Part shown: piece after piece, positions 1 through 64,000 of the stretch
Numbering within the stretch: position 1 is the first letter of the stretch
Layout of the letters: every line of letters begins with the position of its first letter
From: Perna viridis
Taxonomy: Eukaryota
Length of the DNA stretch: 64,000 nucleotides
Assembly: GCA_037379345.1 (NCBI GenBank)
Contig: CM074521.1
Location: 26,064,704-26,128,703 of the forward strand
Direction: 5' to 3'
Notes under the pieces: model-generated
The model's database searches: none
The model's input: only the letters and a program-made list of their open reading frames with translations
What the model was told of the DNA's origin: nothing
Program-made: the position numbers and the translations under genes

Positions 1-228
1 TAATGTTATCAGTTGAAACCAATTTCACTTCTTTTATAGGTCTCTCCTCTGAAGGTGTGTATTCCACAGAAAGTGTTGGTTGGGAACTTTCAAATGGGGT
101 CTTAGATGTTGGTCTCAAGTCTTCAACATTTCCTGTACTATCACTAACAGACAATTCACTACTTGGAATATATGTTGGTGACTCCATACCATCTGTTATT
201 TCGCAAACAGGAGTTGTACTGGCAGTTC
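1..228 (-). CDS. Exon L-B (partial, cut by window edge): (G)TASTTPVCEITDGMESPTYIPSSELSVSDSTGNVEDLRP...
   Basis: Minus-strand acceptor ttttgttgctttacAG|GAACTGCC (plus CT at 229-230); same class as 2184-2464. Confidence 0.88.
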
Positions 229-3200
229 CTGTAAAGCAACAAAAACTCCAATCAATATCAGCTGCTGTAAGTTCTGTTTGCCAGAAATATTTCTCAACAA
301 AACATGTTCTGTTGACTCAAAAAGTGATGGTTCACATTTTTATACAGATGTAAGGGATATAACAAAACGTACCTGTAGTAGTAATGCCTGGTGGTGTGGC
401 TGTACTTGAAACTTTCTCTGAGGTTGAACTTACAGCAGTGGTTACTGTAGTTGTTGATTCTATGAAAGAAAACCAATAGACACTGTAACTACATAGATCA
501 AATTAATAGACTGATACCTACATTACAAATCAGATTTATAACAGAATTTAACACTGACTGCATGTTCAGGAAAAGATTGTGTATTCAAAACAAAGCAAAA
601 AAAAGAACAGATGACTGGAAAATAATCAAATGACTTATTATCTAATTTCGGCAATTAGTATTCTTCAAGAAAACAATTTTAAACAACTGATTTGATACTG
701 CCAACATTATTCACTGAAACACCAATCAAACTGATCACTGATGTTTTGGTATATTCATTCAACCACAATAAGGCATTCACATACGTACCAACTTCAAAGC
801 AAGCATGTATCTGTATTTGGAGTTTGACTGGTTTGTAAGCGTCAATTTTGTCCTCAGGTGTTACAATAATTTCAACTTTCTTTACAAATGGTCTTGTTCC
901 AACACTTGTTGCAACCTCATCCACAGGTACCTGTACAAAAATCAAAACCATGTATATACAACCTTTCTACATGTAGCAATCAAAGCATAACCATAATCAC
1001 AATATTAGTTATGCAAAATGTCTAGGATTTACGAGTCATCCACTGTACGGTTTATTTGAATTGCAAAGAAAAAATCTAATATGATAACTGCGAAGAAAGC
1101 ATACCTGTTTTGTTGTCACTGAACCATCGGGATTAGTGAATTTCACTGTAAATGATTTAATGTTGTCCGTTGACACCAGCTTAACTTCTTTTACAGGTCT
1201 TTCTTCTGACGGTGTGTATACTATGGAAAGTGTTGGTTCAGAACTTTCAAATGGAGTATCAGAGGTTGGTCTCAGGTTCTCAATATTTCCTGTTTTGTCA
1301 CTCACAGATAATTCACTACTTGGAATAAATGTAGGTGACTCCATACCATCTGTTATTTCACAAAGAGGAGTTGTACTGGCTGTTCCTGTAAAACAATCAG
1401 GTCACTCTCGTCATTACATGCAAAGAAAACATAATTTGTTATTTCTCGAACCATTTTAAGTTGACAAAATCAATTGAATTTTTAGACAAGTGTATCATCT
1501 CTTCCAACAGAACTTTTGTACTTGACAGTTGCATAAACAGTATCAAATATTTCTGAACTAACCTGTACTTGATGTACTTGGTGGTGCAGTTGTACTGGTT
1601 ACTTTCTTTGAGACAGAAGAAACAGGTGTGGTAGCAGTTGTTGTTGATTCTGCAAAATAATTAAGAATATCAATTGTTTGTGACAAAGATAAAAGATTAT
1701 TGCACAACAAATGTTATGAAAACCAAAATCTTTAAAAGTATTAAAAGTATTGTCACATAACTACAATGCACAAACTGATGTCTACCAAAAATGATGCTAA
1801 GGTATTGTTTTGTTGATTTCCACTGTTCTTAACAAATAAAATAATTAATATTCCATCATATAAAAGTCACATACCAAGTTCAAAGCAAGCATGGATCTGT
1901 ACTTGGAGCTTGACTGGTTTGTAGGCATCAATCTTATCTTGAGGAGTTATGATGATTTCAACTTTCTTCACATCTGGTTCAGTTCCTACATTTGTTGCTA
2001 CTTCATTCACAGGAACCTGAAATAAGGCAATATGATTTTAATCAACTACCAAATGGCAAATCATGCTCACTACCACCACATTCAATTGCACAAAAATACA
2101 CAGACAAACATTTTTCAATTTATTTGGTATGAACACTCATGAAAAAATACAGATACAAACACGACAAAAGTTCAATATCCTACCTGTTTTGTTGTCACAG
2201 TGCCATCAGGAGCAGTGAATTTCACAGTGAATGATTTAATGTTATCAGTTGAAACCAATTTCACTTCTTTTATAGGTCTCTCCTCTGAAGGTGTGTATTC
2301 CACAGAAAGTGTTGGTTGGGAACTTTCAAATGGGGTCTTAGATGTTGGTCTCAAGTCTTCAACATTTCCTGTACTATCACTAACAGACAATTCACTACTT
2401 GGAATATATGTTGGTGACTCCATACCATCTGTTATTTCGCAAACAGGAGTTGTACTGGCAGTTCCTGTAAAGCAACAAAAACTCCAATCAATATCAGCTG
2501 CTGTAAGTTCTGTTTGCCAGAAATATTTCTCAACAAAACATGTTCTGTTGACTCAAAAAGTGATGGTTCACATTTTTATACAGATGTAAGGGATATAACA
2601 AAACGTACCTGTAGTAGTAATGCCTGGTGGTGTGGCTGTACTTGAAACTTTCTCTGAGGTTGAACTTACAGCAGTGGTTACTGTAGTTGTTGATTCTATG
2701 AAAGAAAACCAATAGACACTGTAACTACATAGATCAAATTAATAGACTGATACCTACATTACAAATCAGATTTATAACAGAATTTAACACTGACTGCATG
2801 TTCAGGAAAAGATTGTGTATTCAAAACAAAGCAAAAAAAAGAACAGATGACTGGAAAATAATCAAATGACTTATTATCTAATTTCGGCAATTAGTATTCT
2901 TCAAGAAAACAATTTTAAACAACTGATTTGATACTGCCAACATTATTCACTGAAACACCAATCAAACTGATCACTGATGTTTTGGTATATTCATTCAACC
3001 ACAATAAGGCATTCACATACGTACCAACTTCAAAGCAAGCATGTATCTGTATTTGGAGTTTGACTGGTTTGTAAGCGTCAATTTTGTCCTCAGGTGTTAC
3101 AATAATTTCAACTTTCTTTACAAATGGTCTTGTTCCAACACTTGTTGCAACCTCATCCACAGGTACCTGTACAAAAATCAAAACCATGTATATACAACCT

Positions 3201-6200
3201 TTCTACATGTAGCAATCAAAGCATAACCATAATCACAATATTAGTTATGCAAAATGTCTAGGATTTACGAGTCATCCACTGTACGGTTTATTTGAATTGC
3301 AAAGAAAAAATCTAATATGATAACTGCGAAGAAAGCATACCTGTTTTGTTGTCACTGAACCATCGGGATTAGTGAATTTCACTGTAAATGATTTAATGTT
3401 GTCCGTTGACACCAGCTTAACTTCTTTTACAGGTCTTTCTTCTGACGGTGTGTATACTATGGAAAGTGTTGGTTCAGAACTTTCAAATGGAGTATCAGAG
3501 GTTGGTCTCAGGTTCTCAATATTTCCTGTTTTGTCACTCACAGATAATTCACTACTTGGAATAAATGTAGGTGACTCCATACCATCTGTTATTTCACAAA
3601 GAGGAGTTGTACTGGCTGTTCCTGTAAAACAATCAGGTCACTCTCGTCATTACATGCAAAGAAAACATAATTTGTTATTTCTCGAACCATTTTAAGTTGA
3701 CAAAATCAATTGAATTTTTAGACAAGTGTATCATCTCTTCCAACAGAACTTTTGTACTTGACAGTTGCATAAACAGTATCAAATATTTCTGAACTAACCT
3801 GTACTTGATGTACTTGGTGGTGCAGTTGTACTGGTTACTTTCTTTGAGACAGAAGAAACAGGTGTGGTAGCAGTTGTTGTTGATTCTGCAAAATAATTAA
3901 GAATATCAATTGTTTGTGACAAAGATAAAAGATTATTGCACAACAAATGTTATGAAAACCAAAATCTTTAAAAGTATTAAAAGTATTGTCACATAACTAC
4001 AATGCACAAACTGATGTCTACCAAAAATGATGCTAAGGTATTGTTTTGTTGATTTCCACTGTTCTTAACAAATAAAATAATTAATATTCCATCATATAAA
4101 AGTCACATACCAAGTTCAAAGCAAGCATGGATCTGTACTTGGAGCTTGACTGGTTTGTAGGCATCAATCTTATCTTGAGGAGTTATGATGATTTCAACTT
4201 TCTTCACATCTGGTTCAGTTCCTACATTTGTTGCTACTTCATTCACAGGAACCTGAAATAAGGCAATATGATTTTAATCAACTACCAAATGGCAAATCAT
4301 GCTCACTACCACCACATTCAATTGCACAAAAATACACAGACAAACATTTTTCAATTTATTTGGTATGAACACTCATGAAAAAATACAGATACAAACACGA
4401 CAAAAGTTCAATATCCTACCTGTTTTGTTGTCACAGTGCCATCAGGAGCAGTGAATTTCACAGTGAATGATTTAATGTTATCAGTTGAAACCAATTTCAC
4501 TTCTTTTATAGGTCTCTCCTCTGAAGGTGTGTATTCCACAGAAAGTGTTGGTTGGGAACTTTCAAATGGGGTCTTAGATGTTGGTCTCAAGTCTTCAACA
4601 TTTCCTGTACTATCACTAACAGACAATTCACTACTTGGAATATATGTTGGTGACTCCATACCATCTGTTATTTCGCAAACAGGAGTTGTACTGGCAGTTC
4701 CTGTAAAGCAACAAAAACTCCAATCAATATCAGCTGCTGTAAGTTCTGTTTGCCAGAAATATTTCTCAACAAAACATGTTCTGTTGACTCAAAAAGTGAT
4801 GGTTCACATTTTTATACAGATGTAAGGGATATAACAAAACGTACCTGTAGTAGTAATGCCTGGTGGTGTGGCTGTACTTGAAACTTTCTCTGAGGTTGAA
4901 CTTACAGCAGTGGTTACTGTAGTTGTTGATTCTATGAAAGAAAACCAATAGACACTGTAACTACATAGATCAAATTAATAGACTGATACCTACATTACAA
5001 ATCAGATTTATAACAGAATTTAACACTGACTGCATGTTCAGGAAAAGATTGTGTATTCAAAACAAAGCAAAAAAAAGAACAGATGACTGGAAAATAATCA
5101 AATGACTTATTATCTAATTTCGGCAATTAGTATTCTTCAAGAAAACAATTTTAAACAACTGATTTGATACTGCCAACATTATTCACTGAAACACCAATCA
5201 AACTGATCACTGATGTTTTGGTATATTCATTCAACCACAATAAGGCATTCACATACGTACCAACTTCAAAGCAAGCATGTATCTGTATTTGGAGTTTGAC
5301 TGGTTTGTAAGCGTCAATTTTGTCCTCAGGTGTTACAATAATTTCAACTTTCTTTACAAATGGTCTTGTTCCAACACTTGTTGCAACCTCATCCACAGGT
5401 ACCTGTACAAAAATCAAAACCATGTATATACAACCTTTCTACATGTAGCAATCAAAGCATAACCATAATCACAATATTAGTTATGCAAAATGTCTAGGAT
5501 TTACGAGTCATCCACTGTACGGTTTATTTGAATTGCAAAGAAAAAATCTAATATGATAACTGCGAAGAAAGCATACCTGTTTTGTTGTCACTGAACCATC
5601 GGGATTAGTGAATTTCACTGTAAATGATTTAATGTTGTCCGTTGACACCAGCTTAACTTCTTTTACAGGTCTTTCTTCTGACGGTGTGTATACTATGGAA
5701 AGTGTTGGTTCAGAACTTTCAAATGGAGTATCAGAGGTTGGTCTCAGGTTCTCAATATTTCCTGTTTTGTCACTCACAGATAATTCACTACTTGGAATAA
5801 ATGTAGGTGACTCCATACCATCTGTTATTTCACAAAGAGGAGTTGTACTGGCTGTTCCTGTAAAACAATCAGGTCACTCTCGTCATTACATGCAAAGAAA
5901 ACATAATTTGTTATTTCTCGAACCATTTTAAGTTGACAAAATCAATTGAATTTTTAGACAAGTGTATCATCTCTTCCAACAGAACTTTTGTACTTGACAG
6001 TTGCATAAACAGTATCAAATATTTCTGAACTAACCTGTACTTGATGTACTTGGTGGTGCAGTTGTACTGGTTACTTTCTTTGAGACAGAAGAAACAGGTG
6101 TGGTAGCAGTTGTTGTTGATTCTGCAAAATAATTAAGAATATCAATTGTTTGTGACAAAGATAAAAGATTATTGCACAACAAATGTTATGAAAACCAAAA

Positions 6201-24200: not shown

Positions 24201-27200
24201 TATTCCATCATATAAAAGTCACATACCAAGTTCAAAGCAAGCATGGATCTGTACTTGGAGCTTGACTGGTTTGTAGGCATCAATCTTATCTTGAGGAGTT
24301 ATGATGATTTCAACTTTCTTCACATCTGGTTCAGTTCCTACATTTGTTGCTACTTCATTCACAGGAACCTGAAATAAGGCAATATGATTTTAATCAACTA
24401 CCAAATGGCAAATCATGCTCACTACCACCACATTCAATTGCACAAAAATACACAGACAAACATCTTTCAATTTATTTGGTATGAACACTCATGAAAAAAT
24501 ACAGATACAAACACGACAAAAGTTCAATATCCTACCTGTTTTGTTGTCACAGTGCCATCAGGAGCAGTGAATTTCACAGTGAATGATTTAATGTTATCAG
24601 TTGAAACCAATTTCACTTCTTTTATAGGTCTCTCCTCTGAAGGTGTGTATTCCACAGAAAGTGTTGGTTGGGAACTTTCAAATGGGGTCTTAGATGTTGG
24701 TCTCAAGTCTTCAACATTTCCTGTACTATCACTAACAGACAATTCACTACTTGGAATAAATGTTGGTGACTCCATACCATCTGTTATTTCGCAAACAGGA
24801 GTTGTACTGGCAGTTCCTGTAAAGCAACAAAAACTCCAATCAATATCAGCTGCTGTAAGTTCTGTTTGCCAGAAATATTTCTCAACAAAACATGTTCTGT
24901 TGACTCAAAAAGTGATGGTCCACATTTTTATACAGATGTAAGGGATATAACAAAACGTACCTGTAGTAGTAATGCCTGGTGGTGTGGCTGTACTTGAAAC
25001 TTTCTCTGAGGTTGAACTTACAGCAGTGGTTACTGTAGTTGTTGATTCTATGAAAGAAAACCAATAGACACTGTAACTACATAGATCAAATTAATAGACT
25101 GATACCTACATTACAAATCAGATTTATAACAGAATTTAACACTGACTGCATGTTCAGGAAAAGATTGTGTATTCAAAACAAAGCAAAAAAAAGAACAGAT
25201 GACTGGAAAATAATCAAATGACTTATTATCTAATTTCGGCAATTAGTATTCTTCAAGAAAACAATTTTAAACAACTGATTTGATACTGCCAACATTATTC
25301 ACTGAAACACCAATCAAACTGATCACTGATGTTTTGGTATATTCATTCAACCACAATAAGGCATTCACATACGTACCAACTTCAAAGCAAGCATGTATCT
25401 GTATTTGGAGTTTGACTGGTTTGTAAGCGTCAATTTTGTCCTCAGGTGTTACAATAATTTCAACTTTCTTTACAAATGGTCTTGTTCCAACACTTGTTGC
25501 AACCTCATCCACAGGTACCTGTACAAAAATTAAAAACATGTATATACAACCTTTCTACATGTAGCAATCAAAGCATAACCATAATCACAATATTAGTTAT
25601 GGAAAATGTCTAGGATTTATGAGTCATTCACTGTACGGTTTATTTGAATTGCAAAGAAAAAATCTAACATGATAACTGCGAAGAAAGCATACCTGTTTTG
25701 TTGTCACTGAACCATCGGGATTAGTGAATTTCACTGTAAATGATTTAATGTTGTCCGTTGACACCAGCTTAACTTCTTTTACAGGTCTTTCTTCTGACGG
25801 TGTGTATACTATGGAAAGTGTTGGTTCAGAACTTTCAAATGGAGTATCAGAGGTTGGTCTCAGGTTCTCAATATTTCCTGTTTTGTCACTCACAGATAAT
25901 TCACTACTTGGAATAAATGTAGGTGACTCCATACCATCTGTTATTTCACAAAGAGGAGTTGTACTGGCTGTTCCTGTAAAACAATCAGGTCACTCTCGTC
26001 ATTACATGCAAAGAAAACATAATTTGTTATTTCTCGAACCATTTTAAGTTGACAAAATCAATTGAATTTTTAGACAAGTGTATCATCTCTTCCAACAGAA
26101 CTTTTGTACTTGACAGTTGCATAAACAGTATCAAATATTTCTGAACTAACCTGTACTTGATGTACTTGGTGGTGCAGTTGTACTGGTTACTTTCTTTGAG
26201 ACAGAAGAAACAGGTGTGGTAGCAGTTGTTGTTGATTCTGCAAAATAATTAAGAATATCAATTGTTTGTGACAAAGATAAAAGATTATTGCACAACAAAT
26301 GCTATGAAAACCAAAATCTTTAAAAGTATTGTCACATAACTACAATGCACAAACTGATGTCTACCAAAAATGATGCTAAGGTATTGTTTCGTTGATTTCC
26401 ACTGTTCTTAACAAATAAAATAATTAATATTCCATCATATAAAAGTCACATACCAAGTTCAAAGCAAGCATGGATCTGTACTTGGAGCTTGACTGGTTTG
26501 TAGGCATCAATCTTATCTTGAGGAGTTATGATGATTTCAACTTTCTTCACATCTGGTTCAGTTCCTACATTTGTTGCTACTTCATTCACAGGAACCTGAA
26601 ATAAGGCAATATGATTTTAATCAACTACCAAATGGCAAATCATGCTCACTACCACCACATTCAATTGCACAAAAATACACAGACAAACATCTTTCAATTT
26701 ATTTGGTATGAACACTCATGAAAAAATACAGATACAAACACGACAAAAGTTCAATATCCTACCTGTTTTGTTGTCACAGTGCCATCAGGAGCAGTGAATT
26801 TCACAGTGAATGATTTAATGTTATCAGTTGAAACCAATTTCACTTCTTTTATAGGTCTCTCCTCTGAAGGTGTGTATTCCACAGAAAGTGTTGGTTGGGA
26901 ACTTTCAAATGGGGTCTTAGATGTTGGTCTCAAGTCTTCAACATTTCCTGTACTATCACTAACAGACAATTCACTACTTGGAATAAATGTTGGTGACTCC
27001 ATACCATCTGTTATTTCGCAAACAGGAGTTGTACTGGCAGTTCCTGTAAAGCAACAAAAACTCCAATCAATATCAGCTGCTGTAAGTTCTGTTTGCCAGA
27101 AATATTTCTCAACAAAACATGTTCTGTTGACTCAAAAAGTGATGGTCCACATTTTTATACAGATGTAAGGGATATAACAAAACGTACCTGTAGTAGTAAT

Positions 27201-36200: not shown

Positions 36201-39200
36201 GTTGTTGATTCTATGAAAGAAAACCAATAGACACTGTAACTACATAGATCAAATTAATAGACTGATACCTACATTACAAATCAGATTTATAACAGAATTT
36301 AACACTGACTGCATGTTCAGGAAAAGATTGTGTATTCAAAACAAAGCAAAAAAAAGAACAGATGACTGGAAAATAATCAAATGACTTATTATCTAATTTC
36401 GGCAATTAGTATTCTTCAAGAAAACAATTTTAAACAACTGATTTGATACTGCCAACATTATTCACTGAAACACCAATCAAACTGATCACTGATGTTTTGG
36501 TATATTCATTCAACCACAATAAGGCATTCACATACGTACCAACTTCAAAGCAAGCATGTATCTGTATTTGGAGTTTGACTGGTTTGTAAGCGTCAATTTT
36601 GTCCTCAGGTGTTACAATAATTTCAACTTTCTTTACAAATGGTCTTGTTCCAACACTTGTTGCAACTTCATCCACAGGTACCTGTACAAAAATCAAAAAC
36701 ATGTATATACAACCTTTCTACATGTAGCAATCAAAGCATAACCATAATCACAATATTAGTTATGGAAAATGTCTAGGATTTATGAGTCATTCACTGTACG
36801 GTTTATTTGAATTGCAAAGAAAAACTCTAACATGATAACTGCGAAGGAAGCATACCTGTTTTGTTGTCACTGAACCATCGGGATTAGTGAATTTCACTGT
36901 AAATGATTTAATGTTGTCCGTTGACACCAGCTTAACTTCTTTTACAGGTCTTTCTTCTGACGGTGTGTATACTATGGAAAGTGTTGGTTCAGAACTTTCA
37001 AATGGAGTATCAGAGGTTGGTCTCAGGTTCTCAATATTTCCTGTTTTGTCACTCACAGATAATTCACTACTTGGAATAAATGTAGGTGACTCCATACCAT
37101 CTGTTATTTCACAAAGAGGAGTTGTACTGGCTGTTCCTGTAAAACAATCAGGTCACTCTCGTCATTACATGCAAAGAAAACATAATTTGTTATTTCTCGA
37201 ACCATTTTAAGTTGACAAAATCAAATGAATTTTTAGACAAGTGTATCATCTCTTCCAACAGAACTTTTGTACTTGACAGTTGCATAAACAGTATCAAATA
37301 TTTCTGAACTAACCTGTACTTGATGGTGCAGTTGTACTGGTTACTTTCTTTGAGACAGAAGAAACAGGTGTGGTAGCAGTTGTTGTTGATTCTGCAAAAT
37401 AATTAAGAATATCAATTGTTTGTGACAAAGATAAAAGATTATTGCACAACAAATGTTATGAAAATCAAAATCTTTAAAAGTATTGTCACATAACTACAAT
37501 GCACAAACTGATGTCTACCAAAAATGATGCTAAGGTATTGTTTTGTTGATTTCCACTGTTCTTAACAAATAAAATAATTAATATTCCATCATATAAAAGT
37601 CACATACCAAGTTCAAAGCAAGCATGGATCTGTACTTGGAGCTTGACTGGTTTGTAGGCATCAATCTTATCTTGAGGAGTTATGATGATTTCAACTTTCT
37701 TCACATCTGGTTCAGTTCCTACATTTGTTGCTACTTCATTCACAGGAACCTGAAATAAGGCAATATGATTTTAATCAACTACCAAATGGCAAATCATGCT
37801 CACTACCACCACATTCAATTGCACAAAAATACACAGACAAACATCTTTCAATTTATTTGGTATGAACACTCATGACAGAATACAGATACAAACACAAGAA
37901 AAGTTCAATATCCTACCTGTTTTGTTGTCACAGTGCCATCAGGAGCAGTGAATTTCACAGTGAATGATTTAATGTTATCAGTTGAAACCAATTTCACTTC
38001 TTTTATAGGTCTCTCCTCTGAAGGTGTGTATTCCACAGAAAGTGTTGGTTGGGAACTTTCAAATGGGGTCTTAGATGTTGGTCTCAAGTCTTCAACATTT
38101 CCTGTACTATCACTAACAGACAATTCACTACTTGGAATAAATGTTGGTGACTCCATACCATCTGTTATTTCGCAAACAGGAGTTGTACTGGCAGTTCCTG
38201 TAAAGCAACAAAAACTCCAATCAATATCAGCTGCTGTAAGTTATGTTTGCCAGAAATATTTCTCAACAAAACATGTTCTGTTGACTCAAAAAGTGATGGT
38301 CCACATTTTTATACAGATGTAAGGGATATAACAAAACGTACCTGTAGTAGTAATGCCTGGTGGTGTGGCTGTACTTGAAACTTTCTCTGAGGTTGAACTT
38401 ACAGCAGTGGTTACTGTAGTTGTTGATTCTATGAAAGAAAACCAATAGACACTGTAACTACATAGATCAAATTAATAGACTGATACCTACATTACAAATC
38501 AGATTTATAACAGAATTTAACACTGACTGCATGTTCAGGAAAAGATTGTGTATTCAAAACAAAGCAAAAAAAAGAACAGATGACTGGAAAATAATCAAAT
38601 GACTTATTATCTAATTTCGGCAATTAGTATTCTTCAAGAAAACAATTTTAAACAACTGATTTGATACTGCCAACATTATTCACTGAAACACCAATCAAAC
38701 TGATCATTGATGTTTTGGTATATTCATTCAACCACAATAAGGCATTCACATACGTACCAACTTCAAAGCAAGCATGTATCTGTATTTGGAGTTTGACTGG
38801 TTTATAAGCGTCAATTTTGTCCTCAGGTGTTACAATAATTTCAACTTTCTTTACAAATGGTCTTGTTCCAACACTTGTTGCAACCTCATCCACAGGTACC
38901 TGTACAAAAATCAAAAACATGTATATACAACCTTTCTACATGTAGCAATCAAAGCATAACCATAATCACAATATTAGTTATGGAAAATGTCTAGGATTTA
39001 TGAGTCATTCACTGTACGGTTTATTTGAATTGCAAAGAAAAACTCTAACATGATAACTGCGAAGAAAGCATACCTGTTTTGTTGTCACTGAACCATCGGG
39101 ATTAGTGAATTTCACTGTAAATGATTTAATGTTGTCCGTTGACACCAGCTTAACTTCTTTTACAGGTCTTTCTTCTGACGGTGTGTATACTATGGAAAGT

Positions 39201-57200: not shown

Positions 57201-60200
57201 CTCGTCATTACATGCAAAGAAAACATAATTTGTTATTTCTCGAACCATTTTAAGTTGACAAAATCAATTGAATTTTTAGACAAGTGTATATCTCTTCCAA
57301 CAGAACTTTTGTACTTGACAGTTGCATAAACAGTATCAAATATTTCTGAACTAACCTGTACTTGATGTACTTGGTGGTGCAGTTGTACTGGTTACTTTCT
57401 TTGAGACAGAAGAAACAGGTGTGGTAGCAGTTGTTGTTGATTCTGCAAAATAATTAAGAATATCAATTGTTTGTGACAAAGATAAAAGATTATTGCACAA
57501 CAAATGTTATGAAAACCAAAATCTTTAAAAGTATTGTCACATAACTACAATGCACAAACTGATGTCTACCAAAAATGATGCTAAGGTATTGTTTTGTTGA
57601 TTTCCACTGTTCTTAACAAATAAAATAATTAATATTCCATCATATAAAAGTCACATACCAAGTTCAAAGCAAGCATGGATCTGTACTTGGAGCTTAACTG
57701 GTTTGTAGGCATCAATCTTATCTTGAGGAGTTATGATGATTTCAACTTTCTTCACATCTGGTTCAGTTCCTACATTTGTTGCTACTTCATTCACAGGAAC
57801 CTGAAATAAGGCAATATGATTTTAATCAACTACCAAATGGCAAATCATGCTCACTACCACCACATTCAATTGCACAAAAATACACAGACAAACATCTTTC
57901 AATTTATTTGGTATGAACACTCATGAAAAAATGCAGATACAAACACAACAAAAGTTCAATATCCTACCTGTTTTGTTGTCACAGTGCCATCAGGAGCAGT
58001 GAATTTCACAGTGAATGATTTAATGTTATCAGTTGAAACCAATTTCACTTCTTTTATAGGTCTCTCCTCTGAAGGTGTGTATTCCACAGAAAGTGTTGGT
58101 TGGGAACTTTCAAATGGGGTCTTAGATGTTGGTCTCAAGTCTTCAACATTTCCTGTACTATCACTAACAGACAATTCACTACTTGGAATAAATGTTGGTG
58201 ACTCCATACCATCTGTTATTTCGCAAACAGGAGTTGTACTGGCAGTTCCTGTAAAGCAACAAAAACTCCAATCAATATCAGCTGCTGTAAGTTATGTTTG
58301 CCAGAAATATTTCTCAACAAAACATGTTCTGTTGACTCAAAAAGTGATGGTCCACATTTTTATACAGATGTAAGGGATATAACAAAACGTACCTGTAGTA
58401 GTAATGCCTGGTGGTGTGGCTGTACTTGAAACTTTCTCTGAGGTTGAACTTACAGCAGTGGTTACTGTAGTTGTTGATTCTATGAAAGAAAACCAATAGA
58501 CACTGTAACTACATAGATCAAATTAATAGACTGATACCTACATTACAAATCAGATTTATAACAGAATTTAACACTGACTGCATGTTCAGGAAAAGATTGT
58601 GTATTCAAAACAAAGCAAAAAAAAGAACAGATGACTGGAAAATAATCAAATGACTTATTATCTAATTTCGGCAATTAGTATTCTTCAAGAAAACAATTTT
58701 AAACAACTGATTTGATACTGCCAACATTATTCACTGAAACACCAATCAAACTGATCACTGATGTTATGGTATATTCATTCAACCACAATAAGGCATTCAC
58801 ATACGTACCAACTTCAAAGCAAGCATGTATCTGTATTTGGAGTTTGACTGGTTTGTAAGCGTCAATTTTGTCCTCAGGTGTTACAATAATTTCAACTTTC
58901 TTTACAAATGGTCTTGTTCCAACACTTGTTGCAACCTCATCCACAGGTACCTGTACAAAAATCAAAAACATGTATATACAACCTTTCTACATGTAGCAAT
59001 CAAAGCATAACCATAATCACAATATTAGTTATGGAAAATGTCTAGGATTTACGAGTCATTCACTGTACGGTTTATTTGAATTGCAAAGAAAAACTCTAAC
59101 ATGATAACTGCGAAGAAAGCATACCTGTTTTGTTGTCACTGAACCATCGGGATTAGTGAATTTCACTGTAAATGATTTAATGTTGTCCGTTGACACCAGC
59201 TTAACTTCTTTTACAGGTCTTTCTTCTGACGGTGTGTATACTATGGAAAGTGTTGGTTCAGAACTTTCAAATGGAGTATCAGAGGTTGGTCTCAGGTTCT
59301 CAATATTTCCTGTTTTGTCACTCACAGATAATTCACTACTTGGAATAAATGTAGGTGACTCCATACCATCTGTTATTTCACAAAGAGGAGTTGTACTGGC
59401 TGTTCCTGTAAAACAATCAGGTCACTCTCGTCATTACATGCAAAGAAAACATAATTTGTTATTTCTCGAACCATTTTAAGTTGACAAAATCAATTGAATT
59501 TTTAGACAAGTGTATCATCTCTTCCAACAGAACTTTTGTACTTGACAGTTGCATAAACAGTATCAAATATTTCTGAACTAACCTGTACTTGATGTACTTG
59601 GTGGTGCAGTTGTACTGGTTACTTTCTTTGAGACAGAAGAAACAGGTGTGGTAGCAGTTGTTGTTGATTCTGCAAAATAATTAAGAATATCAATTGTTTG
59701 TGACAAAGATAAAAGATTATTGCACAACAAATGTTATGAAAACCAAAATCTTTAAAAGTATTGTCACATAACTACAATGCACAAACTGATGTCTACCAAA
59801 AATGATGCTAAGGTATTGTTTTGTTGATTTCCACTGTTCTTAACAAATAAAATAATTAATATTCCATCATATAAAAGTCACATACCAAGTTCAAAGCAAG
59901 CATGGATCTGTACTTGGAGCTTGACTGGTTTGTAGGCATCAATCTTATCTTGAGGAGTTATGATGATTTCAACTTTCTTCACATCTGGTTCAGTTCCTAC
60001 ATTTGTTGCTACTTCATTCACAGGAACCTGAAATAAGGCAATATGATTTTAATCAACTACCAAATGGCAAATCATGCTCACTACCACCACATTCAATTGC
60101 ACAAAAATACACAGACAAACATCTTTCAATTTATTTGGTATGAACACTCATGAAAAAATGCAGATACAAATACAACAAAAGTTCAATATCCTACCTGTTT

Positions 60201-63200
60201 TGTTGTCACAGTGCCATCAGGAGCAGTGAATTTCACAGTGAATGATTTAATGTTATCAGTTGAAACCAATTTCACTTCTTTTATAGGTCTCTCCTCTGAA
60301 GGTGTGTATTCCACAGAAAGAGTTGGTTGGGAACTTTCAAATGGGGTCTTAGATGTTGGTCTCAAGTCTTCAACATTTCCTGTACTATCACTAACAGACA
60401 ATTCACTACTTGGAATAAATGTTGGTGACTCCATACCATCTGTTATTTCGCAAACAGGAGTTGTACTGGCAGTTCCTGTAAAGCAACAAAAACTCCAATC
60501 AATATCAGCTGCTGTAAGTTATGTTTGCCAGAAATATTTCTCAACAAAACATGTTCTGTTGACTCAAAAAGTGATGGTCCACATTTTTATACAGATGTAA
60601 GGGATATAACAAAACGTACCTGTAGTAGTAATGCCTGGTGGTGTGGCTGTACTTGAAACTTTCTCTGAGGTTGAACTTACAGCAGTGGTTACTGTAGTTG
60701 TTGATTCTATGAAAGAAAACCAATAGACACTGTAACTACATAGATCAAATTAATAGACTGATACCTACATTACAAATCAGATTTATAACAGAATTTAACA
60801 CTGACTGCATGTTCAGGAAAAGATTGTGTATTCAAAACAAAGCAAAAAAAAGAACAGATGACTGGAAAATAATCAAATGACTTATTATCTAATTTCGGCA
60901 ATTAGTATTCTTCAAGAAAACAATTTTAAACAACTGATTTGATACTGCCAACATTATTCACTGAAACACCAATCAAACTGATCACTGATGTTTTGGTATA
61001 TTCATTCAACCACAATAAGGCATTCACATACGTACCAACTTCAAAGCAAGCATGTATCTGTATTTGGAGTTTGACTGGTTTGTAAGCGTCAATTTTGTCC
61101 TCAGGTGTTACAATAATTTCAACTTTCTTTACAAATGGTCTTGTTCCAACACTTGTTGCAACCTCATCCACAGGTACCTGTACAAAAATCAAAAACATGT
61201 ATATACAACCTTTCTACATGTAGCAATCAAAGCATAACCATAATCACAATATTAGTTATAGAAAATGTCTAGGATTTACGAGTCATTCACTGTACGGTTT
61301 ATTTGAATTGCAAAGAAAAACTCTAACATGATAACTGCGAAGAAAGCATACCTGTTTTGTTGTCACTGAACCATCGGGATTAGTGAATTTCACTGTAAAT
61401 GATTTAATGTTGTCCGTTGACACCAGCTTAACTTCTTTTACAGGTCTTTCTTCTGACGGTGTGTATACTATGGAAAGTGTTGGTTCAGAACTTTCAAATG
61501 GAGTATCAGAGGTTGGTCTCAGGTTCTCAATATTTCCTGTTTTGTCACTCACAGATAATTCACTACTTGGAATAAATGTAGGTGACTCCATACCATCTGT
61601 TATTTCACAAAGAGGAGTTGTACTGGCTGTTCCTGTAAAACAATCAGGTCACTCTCGTCATTACATGCAAAGAAAACATAATTTGTTATTTCTCGAACCA
61701 TTTTAAGTTGACAAAATCAATTGAATTTTTAGACAAGTGTATCATCTCTTCCAACAGAACTTTTGTACTTGACAGTTGCATAAACAGTATCAAATATTTC
61801 TGAACTAACCTGTACTTGATGTACTTGGTGGTGCAGTTGTACTGGTTACTTTCTTTGAGACAGAAGAAACAGGTGTGGTAGCAGTTGTTGTTGATTCTGC
61901 AAAATAATTAAGAATATCAATTGTTTGTGACAAAGATAAAAGATTATTGCACAACAAATGTTATGAAAACCAAAATCTTTAAAAGTATTGTCACATAACT
62001 ACAATGCACAAACTGATGTCTACCAAAAATGATGCTAAGGTATTGTTTTGTTGATTTCCACTGTTCTTAACAAATAAAATAATTAATATTCCATCATATA
62101 AAAGTCACATACCAAGTTCAAAGCAAGCATGGATCTGTACTTGGAGCTTGACTGGTTTGTAGGCATCAATCTTATCTTGAGGAGTTATGATGATTTCAAC
62201 TTTCTTCACATCTGGTTCAGTTCCTACATTTGTTGCTACTTCATTCACAGGAACCTGAAATAAGGCAATATGATTTTAATCAACTACCAAATGGCAAATC
62301 ATGCTCACTACCACCACATTCAATTGCACAAAAATACACAGACAAACATCTTTCAATTTATTTGGTATGAACACTCATGAAAAAATGCAGATACAAACAC
62401 AACAAAAGTTCAATATCCTACCTGTTTTGTTGTCACAGTGCCATCAGGAGCAGTGAATTTCACAGTGAATGATTTAATGTTATCAGTTGAAACCAATTTC
62501 ACTTCTTTTATAGGTCTCTCCTCTGAAGGTGTGTATTCCACAGAAAGTGTTGGTTGGGAACTTTCAAATGGGGTCTTAGATGTTGGTCTCAAGTCTTCAA
62601 CATTTCCTGTACTATCACTAACAGACAATTCACTACTTGGAATAAATGTTGGTGACTCCATACCATCTGTTATTTCGCAAACAGGAGTTGTACTGGCAGT
62701 TCCTGTAAAGCAACAAAAACTCCAATCAATATCAGCTGCTGTAAGTTATGTTTGCCAGAAATATTTCTCAACAAAACATGTTCTGTTGACTCAAAAAGTG
62801 ATGGTCCACATTTTTATACAGATGTAAGGGATATAACAAAACGTACCTGTAGTAGTAATGCCTGGTGGTGTGGCTGTACTTGAAACTTTCTCTGAGGTTG
62901 AACTTACAGCAGTGGTTACTGTAGTTGTTGATTCTATGAAAGAAAACCAATAGACACTGTAACTACATAGATCAAATTAATAGACTGATACCTACATTAC
63001 AAATCAGATTTATAACAGAATTTAACACTGACTGCATGTTCAGGAAAAGATTGTGTATTCAAAACAAAGCAAAAAAAAGAACAGATGACTGGAAAATAAT
63101 CAAATGACTTATTATCTAATTTCGGCAATTAGTATTCTTCAAGAAAACAATTTTAAACAACTGATTTGATACTGCCAACATTATTCACTGAAACACCAAT

Positions 63201-63859
63201 CAAACTGATCACTGATGTTTTGGTATATTCATTCAACCACAATAAGGCATTCACATACGTACCAACTTCAAAGCAAGCATGTATCTGTATTTGGAGTTTG
63301 ACTGGTTTGTAAGCGTCAATTTTGTCCTCAGGTGTTACAATAATTTCAACTTTCTTTACAAATGGTCTTGTTCCAACACTTGTTGCAACCTCATCCACAG
63401 GTACCTGTACAAAAATCAAAAACATGTATATACAACCTTTCTACATGTAGCAATCAAAGCATAACCATAATCACAATATTAGTTATGGAAAATGTCTAGG
63501 ATTTACGAGTCATTCACTGTACGGTTTATTTGAATTGCAAAGAAAAACTCTAACATGATAACTGCGAAGAAAGCATACCTGTTTTGTTGTCACTGAACCA
63601 TCGGGATTAGTGAATTTCACTGTAAATGATTTAATGTTGTCCGTTGACACCAGCTTAACTTCTTTTACAGGTCTTTCTTCTGACGGTGTGTATACTATGG
63701 AAAGTGTTGGTTCAGAACTTTCAAATGGAGTATCAGAGGTTGGTCTCAGGTTCTCAATATTTCCTGTTTTGTCACTCACAGATAATTCACTACTTGGAAT
63801 AAATGTAGGTGACTCCATACCATCTGTTATTTCACAAAGAGGAGTTGTACTGGCTGTTC
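1..63859 (-). CDS. Internal part of a giant multi-exon gene: mucin-like beads-on-a-string protein with alternating putative divergent F5/8 type C (discoidin-like) domains and Ser/Thr/Pro-rich linkers; ~172 exons and ~9,760 aa in this window, open at both ends
   Basis: Six exon classes per unit, all bounded by AG/GT on the minus strand with pyrimidine-rich acceptors; lengths 281+142+87 twice = 1020 nt, introns 167+225+177+174+329+144 = 1216 nt, total 2236 = the repeat period. Phases are compatible at every junction and I found no stop in the spliced frame. Exons are conserved between A and B halves while introns are not. Gene structure is well supported; the product call is less certain. Confidence 0.88.
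373..459 (-). CDS. Exon S-A, 87 nt, phase 1-1, Ser/Thr linker (E)STTTVTTAVSSTSEKVSSTATPPGITTT(G); 29 copies
   Basis: Acceptor ggttttctttcatAG|AATCA (plus CT 460-461), donor ACAG|GTACGT (plus AC 371-372). Same length and boundaries as paralogous exon S-B. This frame is missing from the ORF track. Confidence 0.85.
789..930 (-). CDS. Exon M-A, 142 nt, phase 0-1: VPVDEVATSVGTRPFVKKVEIIVTPEDKIDAYKPVKLQIQIHACFEV; 29 copies
   Basis: Acceptor gatttttgtacAG|GTACCT (plus CT 931-932), donor GTTG|GTACGT (plus AC 787-788); 39/47 aa identical to M-B, with similarity ending at the splice sites. Confidence 0.9.
1105..1385 (-). CDS. Exon L-A, 281 nt, phase 1-0: (G)TASTTPLCEITDGMESPTFIPSSELSVSDKTGNIENLRPTSDTPFESSEPTLSIVYTPSEERPVKEVKLVSTDNIKSFTVKFTNPDGSVTTKQ; 29 copies
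   Basis: Acceptor ctgattgttttacAG|GAACAGCC (plus CT 1386-1387), donor AAACAG|GTATGC (plus AC 1103-1104); 82/93 aa identical to the Phe allele of L-B. Confidence 0.92.
1563..1649 (-). CDS. Exon S-B, 87 nt, phase 1-1, Ser/Thr linker (E)STTTATTPVSSVSKKVTSTTAPPSTSST(G); 28 copies
   Basis: Acceptor ttaattattttgcAG|AATCA (plus CT 1650-1651), donor ACAG|GTTAGT (plus AC 1561-1562). Missing from the ORF track. Confidence 0.86.
1733..1750. repeat. Intronic 9-bp direct repeat (TAAAAGTAT)x2; one versus two copies defines the 2227 versus 2236 bp unit types
   Basis: tttaaaagtattaaaagtattgtc here versus tttaaaagtattgtc at ~24092 and in all units from ~44162 on. Confidence 0.95.
1875..2016 (-). CDS. Exon M-B, 142 nt, phase 0-1: VPVNEVATNVGTEPDVKKVEIIITPQDKIDAYKPVKLQVQIHACFEL; 28 copies
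   Basis: Acceptor ccttatttcAG|GTTCCT (plus CT 2017-2018), donor CTTG|GTATGT (plus AC 1873-1874). Missing from the ORF track; found by homology to M-A. Confidence 0.9.
2184..2464 (-). CDS. Exon L-B, 281 nt, phase 1-0: (G)TASTTPVCEITDGMESPT[Y/F]IPSSELSVSDSTGNVEDLRPTSKTPFESSQPTLSVEYTPSEERPIKEVKLVSTDNIKSFTVKFTAPDGTVTTKQ; 28 full copies plus 1 partial
   Basis: Acceptor tttacAG|GAACTG (plus CT 2465-2466), donor AAACAG|GTAGGA (plus AC 2182-2183). Confidence 0.92.
37314..37391 (-). CDS. Variant exon S-B with in-frame 9-nt deletion (78 nt; loses Pro-Ser-Thr)
   Basis: Plus strand reads acctgtacttgatg^gtgcag instead of acctgtacttgatgTACTTGGTGgtgcag; splice sites intact; together with the intronic 9-bp loss it explains the 2218 bp spacing of this unit. 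Confidence 0.9.
62422..62702 (-). CDS. Exon L-B, most upstream copy in window
   Basis: Same boundaries as 2184-2464, offset from the Met codon at 62661. Confidence 0.88.
62847..62933 (-). CDS. Exon S-A, most upstream copy in window
   Basis: Same sequence and splice sites as 373-459. Confidence 0.85.
63263..63404 (-). CDS. Exon M-A, most upstream copy in window
   Basis: Acceptor at plus CT 63405-63406; same as 789-930. Confidence 0.88.
63579..63859 (-). CDS. Exon L-A, first exon of the window in transcription order
   Basis: Acceptor at plus CT 63860-63861; 63860-64000 is the preceding intron, so the gene continues upstream. Confidence 0.9.
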
Positions 63860-64000
63860 CTGTAAAACAATCAGGTCACTCTCGTCATTACATGCAAAGA
63901 AAACATAATTTGTTATTTCTCGAACCATTTTAAGTTGACAAAATCAATTGAATTTTTAGACAAGTGTATCATCTCTTCCAACAGAACTTTTGTACTTGAC

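What the first reader, a model, noticed from the sequence alone, without database searches (positions are those of the whole stretch)
1..63859. A satellite-like array is one spliced reading frame: a giant protein of more than 9,700 aa built from a tandemly amplified exon-intron cassette
Seen: six GT-AG exons per 2.2 kb unit join in frame (281/142/87 nt twice). That gives 340 aa per unit, ~172 exons, ~29.3 kb of coding sequence and 57 complete domain+linker modules, with no start, stop or unique sequence in 64 kb. Inference: the protein exceeds about 1 MDa from this window alone. Established: vertebrate gel-forming mucin PTS repeats typically sit in one large exon, whereas intron-containing coding arrays are known from e.g. 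the LPA kringle IV-2 repeat and the nebulin/titin triplicated regions. A 6-exon dimer repeated at least 28 times at near identity is an extreme case that repeat-maskers and gene predictors would probably hide or fragment.
Basis: partly seen in the sequence, partly recalled or inferred. Interest (0 to 1): 0.9.

Follow-up and report, generated by a model that had tools for sequence, protein, structure and literature searches.

The report
Giant mussel-type mucin, discoidin-bead exon array
The 64-kb "satellite" is the inner part of a very large mucus-protein gene, probably from a mussel-like bivalve. A three-exon cassette (a sugar-coated spacer plus a small discoidin-fold domain) has been copied dozens of times at near identity. 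This is a striking example of a known way of building giant mucins, not a new kind of gene.

Summary
The window carries 28 full copies and one partial copy of a 2.22–2.24-kb unit, about 99.5% identical to each other. On the minus strand every unit has six exons (281/142/87 nt, twice). All 171 complete exons have AG…GT borders. They join into 9,686 codons with no stop, about 1.03 MDa of polypeptide.

The exons are coding:
- Between the two half-units, exons are 71–85% identical, introns do not align, and dN/dS is 0.15.
- Exons vary less than introns among copies (p=0.002).
- The exon design is kept in about 21 diverged modules nearby, in a relative's contig and in Mytilus coruscus.

In the genome the homogeneous array has 71 modules (78.5 kb), with in-frame unique exons on both sides. 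On the same strand lie VWD/C8/LDLa exons about 125–140 kb 5′-ward. Canonical F5/8-type-C exons and long Thr/Ser/Pro exon arrays lie 3′-ward.

Public models of homologues exist: "mucin-17-like" in M. californianus (4,412 aa) and VWD-bearing proteins in Potamilus and Macrostomum. A Mytilus homologue of the module folds with high confidence as a discoidin domain (Z≈13), although Pfam does not detect it.

No RNA evidence could be obtained, so a single transcript remains inferred. MUC16 is a precedent for exon-cassette mucin repeats. The only earlier scan notes found were on this same window.

The parts
1..63859 (-). Segment of the homogenised array: 28 complete 2.2-kb dimer units plus a partial one. 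It holds 171 complete exons (57 modules) and one truncated exon A. It lies inside a larger array at G000:C11:26050930-26129632.
1..228 (-). Truncated exon A. The exon starts at window 228 and runs off the window's low end.
3025..3166 (-). Exon B, first half-unit type (142 nt, phase 0 to 1). It encodes the C-terminal third of the discoidin-fold domain, including the closing Cys.
2609..2695 (-). Exon C (87 nt, symmetric phase 1 to 1). It encodes a Thr/Ser/Pro-rich spacer, 68-75% S+T+P.
2184..2464 (-). Exon A (281 nt, phase 1 to 0). It encodes the end of the spacer, then the opening Cys and the N-terminal two thirds of the discoidin-fold domain.
1875..2016 (-). Exon B, second half-unit type (142 nt).
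1563..1649 (-). Exon C, second half-unit type (87 nt).
1105..1385 (-). Exon A, second half-unit type (281 nt).
37314..37391 (-). The one aberrant exon C: 78 nt, an in-frame 9-nt deletion. It is the only exon length variant in the window.
63860..64000 (-). Intron sequence (part of the C-to-A intron) at the 5' edge of the window. The array continues beyond it.

Best explanation
The window is an internal stretch of one very large secreted, gel-forming-mucin-like gene on the minus strand. The genome is probably that of a mytilid-like bivalve.

The repeating protein module is about 170 aa. It consists of a roughly 35-aa Thr/Ser/Pro spacer, presumably O-glycosylated, followed by a roughly 130-aa all-beta domain bracketed by two Cys. 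That domain is a strongly diverged discoidin (F5/8 type C) fold.

Each module is written in three exons:
- A, 281 nt: end of the spacer plus two thirds of the domain.
- B, 142 nt: the last third of the domain.
- C, 87 nt: the spacer, as a symmetric mini-exon.

An old duplication made a two-module, six-exon unit. This dimer was then amplified and is kept nearly identical by unequal crossing-over or gene conversion, while selection keeps the exons intact.

The likely protein layout is N-terminal VWD-C8 assemblies for disulfide multimerisation, then more than 100 discoidin-type beads on glycosylated spacers, then canonical discoidin domains and long spacer-only arrays.

The likely function is a mucus or adhesive-secretion scaffold. 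Many weak lectin-like domains would bind glycans, its own or those of particles and microbes, and so cross-link the gel.

Shown: the reading frame, the selection on exons, the conserved exon design, the flanking domains on the same strand, the discoidin fold of a homologue, and homologous multi-module gene models.

Inferred: transcription as one mRNA, secretion, glycosylation, ligand binding, and the identity of the organism.
For: Frame: 171/171 exons have AG..GT borders and chain into 9,686 codons with no stop.

Selection on exons:
- Between half-units, exons are 71-85% identical while introns are about 50% (unalignable). dN/dS is 0.15.
- Among the 28 copies, 11 of 1,020 exon sites vary against 36 of 1,207 intron sites (Fisher p=0.0017). 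Exon changes are 7 synonymous to 4 non-synonymous. All indels are intronic except one in-frame 9-nt deletion.

Conserved design elsewhere:
- About 21 further modules lie 5'-ward at 43-65% (exon A) and 48-73% (exon B) aa identity. All are open. The exon-A donor and both borders of the 142-nt exon B sit at homologous positions in nearly all of them, and both Cys are invariant.
- A relative's contig has the same six-exon dimer, with exons 74-87% identical and introns diverged.
- The M. coruscus locus has the same 281/142-nt exons in a roughly 1.6-kb monomer array.

Continuity with flanking exons:
- 3' edge: the last exon B (phase 1) meets a canonical discoidin exon pair of exactly 281 and 142 nt with the same phases.
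- 5' edge: a unique 105-nt phase 1-1 spacer exon links the last diverged module to the array.

Same-strand context: VWD at C11:26269364-26269612 and 26257142-26257489. C8 at 26265644, 26261603 and 26254588. LDLa at 26252613. F5_F8_type_C above the Pfam cut-off at 26047736-26047921. Thr/Ser/Pro exon arrays run down to 25977358.

Homologues: a profile of exon-A translations finds 102 proteins. Examples are XP_052090872.1 'mucin-17-like' of M. californianus (4,412 aa, modules every 209 aa), mucin-2-like proteins of Lineus, Liolophura and Patella, and Potamilus and Macrostomum proteins with three VWD-C8-TIL assemblies upstream of the modules. An M. trossulus model joins the last module to the orthologous canonical discoidin domain.

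Fold: the AlphaFold model of the M. coruscus homologue has pLDDT 92-98 over the complete module. The top 36 Foldseek hits are all neuropilin b1b2 or factor V/VIII C domains. VIA-align gives Z 12.2-13.1 and rmsd about 3 A over about 125 residues against neuropilin b1, FVIII C2, discoidin I/II and DDR1.

Sequence link: exon-B profile against canonical discoidin exon 2 gives hhalign probability 66%, E 5.7e-5, in register with the closing Cys.

Array looks real: variant positions are ordered along it. Neighbouring units differ at about 9 columns and distant ones at about 23.
Against: - There is no transcript or peptide evidence for this genome.
- The near identity of the copies means the stop-free frame over 29 kb is not 57 independent tests.
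- Copy number in a 78-kb, 99.5%-identical array could be mis-assembled.
- Pfam F5_F8_type_C does not hit the module exons even at E<=1. The exon-A profile shows no sequence similarity to canonical discoidin exon 1. The module has no Trp.
- The fold was obtained on a 57%-identical Mytilus homologue, not on the window's own joined module.
- No cystine-knot exon was found near the 3' side.
Confidence: 0.72

Rival explanations
1. The exons are real, but the mature products are much smaller or heterogeneous. Either the roughly 290-kb minus-strand locus is several adjacent genes, or whole modules are skipped. Each module is 510 nt, the A+B pair is 423 nt and C is 87 nt, so all of these can be skipped in frame. 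On this reading no single 9,700-aa stretch, let alone the whole locus, is translated as one chain.
For: All cassette pieces are phase-symmetric, so skipping keeps the frame. There is no RNA evidence. Public models of homologues are shorter: 392 and 692 aa in M. coruscus and 4,412 aa in M. californianus. The locus contains several different arrays and interspersed LDLa and discoidin exons.
Against: The 64 kb contains no Met-initiated signal peptide, stop codon or terminal-type exon. The only Met per module is inside the domain. Both array edges continue in frame into unique exons. VWD-C8 N-terminal assemblies occur only at the 5' end of the locus. Potamilus and Macrostomum homologues place such assemblies and modules in one protein. 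The short public models look like fragmentation in repeats.
Confidence: 0.15
2. The array is real in kind but wrong in size. The 35.5 dimers (28 in the window) would be an assembly artefact, over-expanded or collapsed, of a shorter or longer array. It could also be a polymorphic variable-number repeat for which this haplotype is not typical.
For: Arrays at 99.5% identity with a 2.2-kb period are hard to assemble. No reads could be inspected. The M. coruscus copy of the locus shows apparent frameshifts typical of assembly error.
Against: Variants are ordered along the array with a smooth distance-decay, and a 9-bp intron indel is confined to the second half of the array, from unit 11 onward, interleaved with undeleted units up to unit 19. 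This is as expected for a resolved array and not for stacked errors. There are no N gaps in the window or in the 224 kb of flank examined.
Confidence: 0.09
3. The array is a dead, recently amplified satellite derived from a fragment of a mucin gene. It looks intact only because it is young.
For: Very high copy identity means there has been little time for stops to accumulate, and no expression data exist.
Against: Variation among copies is already skewed: exon sites vary a third as often as intron sites, 7 of 11 exon changes are synonymous, and indels avoid exons. The array sits in frame between unique exons. The same amplified cassette is maintained independently in Mytilus and in a closer relative.
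Confidence: 0.04

Closest known systems
Spiralian 'mucin-17-like / mucin-2-like' predicted proteins (XP_052090872.1 Mytilus californianus, CAC5411568.1 M. coruscus, XP_064639835.1 Lineus longissimus, XP_064614628.1 Liolophura sinensis, XP_055959230.1 Patella vulgata, KAK3603587.1 Potamilus streckersoni, Macrostomum lignano VWFD proteins)
   Same: Homologous module: 57% identity to Mytilus, profile E-values down to 1e-56. Two-Cys domain plus Thr/Ser/Pro spacer. The same 281/142-nt exon pair occurs in Mytilus. VWD-C8-TIL(-LDLa) lies upstream in Potamilus and Macrostomum.
   Different: Here the amplified unit is a two-module, six-exon dimer of 2.2 kb, with 71 modules at about 99.5% identity. Mytilus has a roughly 1.6-kb monomer. 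The public models are automatic, unnamed as a family, probably truncated, and carry no Pfam domain for the module.
MUC16 (CA125) tandem-repeat region
   Same: A mucin whose repeat is a folded domain plus an O-glycosylated spacer. Each repeat is encoded by a multi-exon cassette (five exons per 156-aa repeat) repeated at least 60 times, giving a repeat region of at least about 9,800 aa (PMC3431878).
   Different: The MUC16 domain is SEA (alpha/beta), its repeats are diverged, and the protein is membrane-tethered. Here the domain has a discoidin fold, the copies are nearly identical, and the context is VWD/C8, the secreted gel-forming type.
F5/8 type C (discoidin) domains: neuropilin b1/b2, factor V/VIII C1/C2, Dictyostelium discoidin I/II, DDR1
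   Same: Same fold (Z about 13, rmsd about 3 A over about 125 residues, on a homologue). The domain is bracketed by an N- and a C-terminal Cys. The two-exon design and phases match the canonical discoidin exons in the same gene.
   Different: 11-18% identity. No Pfam PF00754 match. No Trp. About 130 rather than about 150 residues. Ligand unknown.
VWD-plus-lectin-domain secretion proteins of marine invertebrates and insects (sea-star Sfp1/Sfp2, limpet P-vulgata_3, flatworm ap1, hemolectin/hemocytin, SCO-spondin)
   Same: Large secreted proteins that combine VWD-C8-TIL multimerisation modules with LDLa and glycan-binding (galactose-binding/FA58C) domains. They are proposed to cross-link glycan-rich secretions (PMC9382459; PMC7333891).
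   Different: Those proteins are about 1,600-3,900 aa with few lectin domains and no long homogenised exon-cassette array. Homology to them beyond the shared domain types was not tested.
LPA kringle IV-2 and nebulin/titin repeat blocks
   Same: Intron-containing coding cassettes amplified in tandem at high identity and kept in frame.
   Different: Unrelated domains and biology. LPA KIV-2 is a two-exon, 5.5-kb unit with up to about 40 copies. This comparison rests on general knowledge and was not tested here.

Membership tests
F5/8 type C (discoidin) domain, Pfam PF00754 | Significant match to the family HMM | tested here: not met
   hmmscan of exon translations gave no hit at E<=10. A six-frame genome search with PF00754 at E<=1 hits canonical exons at C11:26047736-26047921 but none of the array exons. 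Full-length homologues have no Pfam domain on the module.
F5/8 type C (discoidin) domain, Pfam PF00754 | Distorted beta-barrel/jelly-roll fold superposable on solved discoidin domains | tested here: met
   Tested on the M. coruscus homologue, not on the window's own joined module. pLDDT is 92-98. Foldseek's top 36 hits are all discoidin-domain proteins. VIA-align gives Z 12.2-13.1, rmsd 2.6-3.9 A and 121-131 aligned residues among the single-domain matches.
F5/8 type C (discoidin) domain, Pfam PF00754 | Cys at each end of the domain (terminal disulfide) | tested here: met
   Cys8 of exon A and Cys44 of exon B are invariant in all modules. There are exactly 2 Cys per module. The structural matches span Cys to Cys. 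The disulfide bond itself was not tested.
F5/8 type C (discoidin) domain, Pfam PF00754 | Conserved Trp and signature motifs of canonical members | tested here: not met
   There are 0 Trp in 9,686 residues, while the canonical copies in the same gene keep an invariant Trp. Exon-A profile against canonical exon 1: hhalign probability 2%. Exon B against canonical exon 2: probability 66%, E 5.7e-5. By eye, a G-[LM]-E-S..IPSS-like N-terminal motif is shared with the Mytilus canonical domain.
F5/8 type C (discoidin) domain, Pfam PF00754 | Same exon design as bona fide discoidin domains of the same gene | tested here: met
   The canonical domain next to the array is encoded by exons of exactly 281 nt (phase 1 to 0) and 142 nt (phase 0 to 1), as in the module. 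Two other canonical copies have the same phases.
Gel-forming (VWD-type) mucins | Long Pro/Thr/Ser-rich regions | tested here: met
   Overall composition is T 17%, S 13%, P 9%. Exon C is 68-75% S+T+P. Spacer-only exons of 261-344 aa lie downstream. Glycosylation itself is not testable here.
Gel-forming (VWD-type) mucins | N-terminal VWD-C8(-TIL) assemblies in the same protein | tested here: inconclusive
   VWD and C8 exons lie on the same strand about 125-140 kb 5'-ward, and homologues carry them in one model. That they are spliced to the array was not shown. TIL was not searched.
Gel-forming (VWD-type) mucins | C-terminal cystine knot | tested here: not met
   PF00007 at E<=0.1 has no hit between C11:25.9 and 26.3 Mb. 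The 3' end of the gene was not reached.
MUC16-type SEA-repeat mucins | SEA domain in each repeat | tested here: not met
   The module is all-beta with a discoidin fold. No SEA hit in Pfam.
Spiralian discoidin-bead mucin family (unnamed; RefSeq 'mucin-17-like/mucin-2-like') | Sequence homology of the module and shared exon structure | tested here: met
   Profile search: 102 hits, 8 at E<=1e-30. 57% identity to every module of XP_052090872.1. Homologous splice sites in M. coruscus.

The most novel reading that the evidence does not exclude
The whole minus-strand locus, from the VWD/C8 exons near C11:26.27 Mb to the last Thr/Ser/Pro exons near 25.98 Mb (about 290 kb), is one gene. Its product would exceed roughly 25,000-30,000 aa, in the size class of titin. 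It would carry more than 100 diverged discoidin lectin-like beads that bind the mucin's own O-glycans, a self-cross-linking mucus polymer. Copy number would be tuned rapidly by unequal crossing-over, independently in each mytilid lineage.
Probability: 0.3. Interest if true: 0.75.

Novelty: new variant of a known kind. Interest (0 to 1): 0.55.

Why it matters
The array shows that an apparent 2.2-kb satellite can be fully coding. Repeat masking or short-read assembly would hide more than 1 MDa of protein, so mucin and secretome catalogues of bivalves are probably badly truncated. The fragmented M. coruscus models illustrate this.

It defines a module that Pfam does not recognise but that is conserved across molluscs, nemerteans and flatworms. 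That module can now be read as a diverged discoidin domain. This suggests a testable mechanism for invertebrate mucus and adhesive gels, in which lectin-like beads bind glycans.

It is also a clean natural example of concerted evolution acting on a multi-exon cassette while purifying selection remains visible. An older A/B duplication is frozen inside the homogenised unit.

It is not a new principle. MUC16 and LPA already show multi-exon coding cassettes amplified in tandem.

Tried and rejected
- Tandem Repeats Finder reported nothing because its longest period is 500 bp. A k-mer offset analysis was used instead.
- My first exon-C borders were one base off, giving TA/CA 'acceptors' and GG 'donors'. 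They were corrected. Exon C is open in two frames, which had hidden the error.
- Pfam on single exons and on full homologues gave nothing real. The APT, DAP_epimerase and TRAP-delta hits have 0 significant stretches and are summed noise over repeats.
- A PDB sequence search with the exon-A profile gave only chance hits, E>1.
- The first hhalign run was spoiled by read-through tails in two rows. It was redone with clean exon alignments.
There is no RNA evidence either way.
Extents beyond C11:26024704-26248703 come only from the genome search coordinates.
- The search for homologous proteins with exon A returned only unspliced read-through ORFs from relatives' genomic contigs. With the Mytilus protein as query, low-complexity candidates saturated the search. 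No transcript-derived contig was found.
- No Rfam family or tRNA occurs in the window.
- The long plus-strand ORFs are antisense to exon A and have no support.
- A literature search found no paper describing this family, and the accession of the relative's run appears in no paper.
- The fold rests on a public homologue.

Full report
1. The observation.

The window is AT-rich (34% GC), uniform in composition and contains no N. An exact 40-mer recurs 29 times at spacings of 2,218–2,237 bp. The 28 complete units are on average 99.5% identical, minimum 99.1%, with 77 variable alignment columns.

After I corrected a one-base slip of my own for exon C, all 171 complete exons are flanked by AG and GT. 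They comprise 57 of 281 nt, 57 of 142 nt, 56 of 87 nt and one of 78 nt. Acceptors have good polypyrimidine tracts and donors read GTA/GTT. Phases are 1→0, 0→1 and 1→1. The chain is 29,061 nt, or 9,686 codons, without a stop.

The polypeptide is 1.034 MDa, with T 17%, S 13%, V 11% and P 9%. It has exactly two Cys and one Met per module and no Trp.

The joined frame was computed only inside scripts, for stop counts, composition and mass. All searches were exon by exon, by reference.

2. Is it coding?

Because the copies are nearly identical, the absence of stops is not 57 independent tests. The independent evidence is comparative.

(a) The two half-units. Exons are 85%, 82% and 71% identical. 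The three intron pairs are about 50% identical, which means unalignable. Across the 170 codons, pS=0.46 and pN=0.10, giving dN/dS 0.15.

(b) The 28 copies. 11 of 1,020 exon sites vary against 36 of 1,207 intron sites (Fisher p=0.0017). Exon changes are 7 synonymous to 4 non-synonymous. Every indel is intronic except one in-frame 9-nt deletion.

(c) Diverged modules. 5′-ward of the array are about 21 further modules at 43–65% (exon A) and 48–73% (exon B) amino-acid identity. All are open. The exon-A donor and both borders of a 142-nt exon B (139 nt in one copy) sit at homologous positions in nearly all of them. Both Cys and a set of core residues are invariant.

(d) A closer relative. A 2.2-kb genomic contig from a relative (Logan run SRR26215657; protein P0001 is 89% identical) has the same six exons in the same A/B order. 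Five of the six have AG/GT borders at the homologous positions. The sixth donor reads GC at the projected position, which is uncertain because that exon aligned only partly. Its exons are 74–87% identical and its introns are diverged.

(e) Mytilus coruscus. It has the same 281-nt and 142-nt exons in a roughly 1.6-kb monomer array.

The exons have therefore been under purifying selection before, during and after the amplification.

3. Extent and surroundings.

The window is G000:C11:26064704–26128703 of a 723-Mb, 46-contig assembly. The homogeneous array runs from 26050930 to 26129632 and holds 71 modules in 78.5 kb.

3′ edge. The last exon B ends in phase 1. It is followed by an exon with a strong acceptor in phase 1 that is exactly 281 nt long, then by one of exactly 142 nt. 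Together they encode a canonical discoidin domain. Pfam F5_F8_type_C scores 18 bits for this one and 30 bits, above the cut-off, for the next copy.

5′ edge. A unique 105-nt, phase 1–1 Thr/Ser/Pro exon links the last diverged module to the first array exon A. The array is therefore embedded in frame between unique exons.

Further 5′ on the same strand lie:
- a roughly 1.8–2.0-kb monomer array (seven copies);
- ever more diverged modules, up to 26216466;
- an LDLa-like exon, seen by eye;
- another discoidin-like exon pair;
- an array of a related module type at 26231–26245 kb;
- LDLa at 26252613;
- C8 at 26254588, 26261603 and 26265644;
- VWD at 26257142 and 26269364.

Further 3′ lie a retroelement reverse-transcriptase ORF in an intron, another beta-rich exon pair, and arrays of 170–700-aa Thr/Ser/Pro/Gly exons down to 25977358. 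No cystine-knot exon was found nearby.

A second cluster of related modules lies on the opposite strand at 25.67–25.85 Mb.

4. Relatives.

A profile of exon-A translations searched against 1.84 billion representatives gave 102 hits. The named ones are:
- Mytilus coruscus CAC5411568.1. This spliced model shows the same A|B|C joins.
- M. californianus XP_052090872.1 "mucin-17-like", 4,412 aa. Its modules recur every 209 aa and are each about 57% identical to the window's.
- "Mucin-2-like" proteins of the nemertean Lineus, the chiton Liolophura and the limpet Patella.
- A Potamilus "SCO-spondin" and Macrostomum "VWFD domain" proteins.

The last two carry three VWD-C8-TIL assemblies (plus LDLa in Potamilus) upstream of the modules. 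That is the order seen at this locus. An M. trossulus RefSeq model runs from the last module through a spacer into the orthologue of the canonical discoidin domain, matching the 3′ edge here.

From these identities the genome is probably a mytilid-like bivalve outside the genus Mytilus. This is an inference and was not tested.

5. What the module is.

Pfam sees nothing in the exons or in the homologues. The PDB gives nothing by sequence.

I folded the public M. coruscus protein, using an alignment in which window and locus exons were separate rows. The complete module (residues about 190–322) has pLDDT 92–98 and is all-beta. Foldseek's first 36 matches are all neuropilin b1b2 or factor V/VIII C1–C2. 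VIA-align gives Z 12.2–13.1 and rmsd about 3 Å over about 125 of about 133 residues against neuropilin-1 b1, FVIII C2, discoidin I/II and DDR1, spanning Cys to Cys.

The gene structure agrees independently. Canonical discoidin domains in the same gene use the same two-exon split, the same phases and, in one case, the same 281/142-nt lengths.

At the sequence level, only exon B shows a detectable link to canonical exon 2 (hhalign 66%, E 5.7e-5). Exon A shows none, and the canonical Trp is absent.

I therefore call it a strongly diverged discoidin-fold domain, derived from the discoidin exon pair. It is not a detectable Pfam member.

6. How it most likely works.

Shown: a stop-free, selection-maintained cassette array, embedded in frame in a locus whose same-strand exons encode VWD/C8/LDLa, discoidin and Thr/Ser/Pro domains, with homologues modelled as giant mucins.

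Inferred: a secreted, multimerising, heavily O-glycosylated polymer in which discoidin-type beads alternate with glycosylated spacers. Discoidin domains elsewhere bind galactose/GalNAc, lipids or peptides. Work on sea-star and limpet secretions has proposed that lectin domains and glycans cross-link such materials (PMC9382459; PMC7333891). A self-cross-linking or particle-binding mucus scaffold is therefore the most economical function.

The array's history has two tiers:
- An old A/B duplication, with dS near saturation, is shared with the relative.
- The dimer was homogenised recently, with neighbouring units more alike than distant ones (9 against 23 differing columns). A 9-bp intron deletion is confined to the second half of the array, from unit 11 onward, and is interleaved with undeleted units up to unit 19.

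This is the signature of unequal crossing-over or gene conversion. In Mytilus the amplified unit is a monomer, so amplification was independent.

7. Rivals.

- Smaller or alternatively spliced products cannot be excluded without RNA. Every cassette piece is phase-symmetric.
- Copy number could be mis-assembled, although the ordered variant pattern argues for a resolved array.
- A dead satellite is unlikely, given the selection signal among copies and the in-frame flanks.

8. Novelty.

The kind is known. MUC16 repeats are 156 aa, five exons each, with at least 60 copies (PMC3431878). LPA KIV-2 is another amplified coding cassette. Homologues of this gene are already in RefSeq under automatic names.

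What is new:
- the discoidin reading of a module that Pfam does not recognise and that is conserved across Spiralia;
- the six-exon dimer homogenised to about 99.5% over 71 modules;
- the possibility that the whole roughly 290-kb locus is one gene.

I found no paper describing the family, but the library is limited.

Noticed in passing
L007/L008 and beyond (G000:C11:25977358-26042700, minus strand): A second kind of array lies 3'-ward. It has large single exons (261-344 aa here, open frames up to about 700 aa further on) of Thr/Ser/Pro/Gly repeats at a period of about 1,565 bp. This is the classical one-big-exon PTS style, on the same strand as the cassette array.
   Followed up: partly
L001-L003 (C11:26138262-26150294, minus strand): A third homogenised array of about seven monomer modules with a period of about 1.79-2.0 kb. 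It is about 63% (exon A) and 73% (exon B) identical to the window's modules, so several blocks of the gene have been amplified independently.
   Followed up: partly
L015-L016 (C11:26231273-26245112, minus strand): An array of a more distant module type, with an opening Cys followed by an E-N-M-S-P-L-S-E-N motif. It has paralogous arrays on the opposite strand at C11:25742636-25817363 and weaker ones at 25667902-25724041. This looks like a second, convergently oriented giant mucin locus.
   Followed up: partly
L006:1679-2763 (C11:26046382-26047466) and L012 (C11:26200062-26201153), minus strand: Reverse-transcriptase-like ORFs of the same retroelement family sit inside introns of the gene. Pfam gave no hit on the one piece tested. 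The reverse-transcriptase reading is by eye, from a Y-I-D-D motif.
   Followed up: no
G000:C11:27108437-27177241 (plus strand): About 1 Mb away lies another large gene with VWD, C8, several strong F5/8-type-C exons and a cystine-knot hit. It looks hemolectin/SCO-spondin-like and is a likely older relative of the domain set used here.
   Followed up: no
window 37314-37391: The only exon length variant in the window: an exon C shortened by an in-frame 9-nt deletion.
   Followed up: yes
window, B-to-C intron of the second half-unit, all units: A 9-bp intron indel gives units of 2,236 or 2,227 bp. Units 1-10 all carry the long form. From unit 11 on the short form appears, mixed with long units up to unit 19, and it is fixed from unit 20. 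Single-base variants show the same positional blocks. This is a record of local expansions within the array.
   Followed up: partly
window, every exon C (e.g. 2609-2695): Exon C is open in two of three frames in all 57 copies, which allowed my mis-phased join to pass the stop test at first. Stop counts alone are weak evidence for short low-complexity exons.
   Followed up: yes
L019 (Mytilus coruscus CACVKT020007872.1): In the public M. coruscus assembly several modules show split, frame-shifted matches, and the annotation breaks the array into small genes (392 aa, 692 aa). This illustrates how such arrays are fragmented in current annotations.
   Followed up: partly
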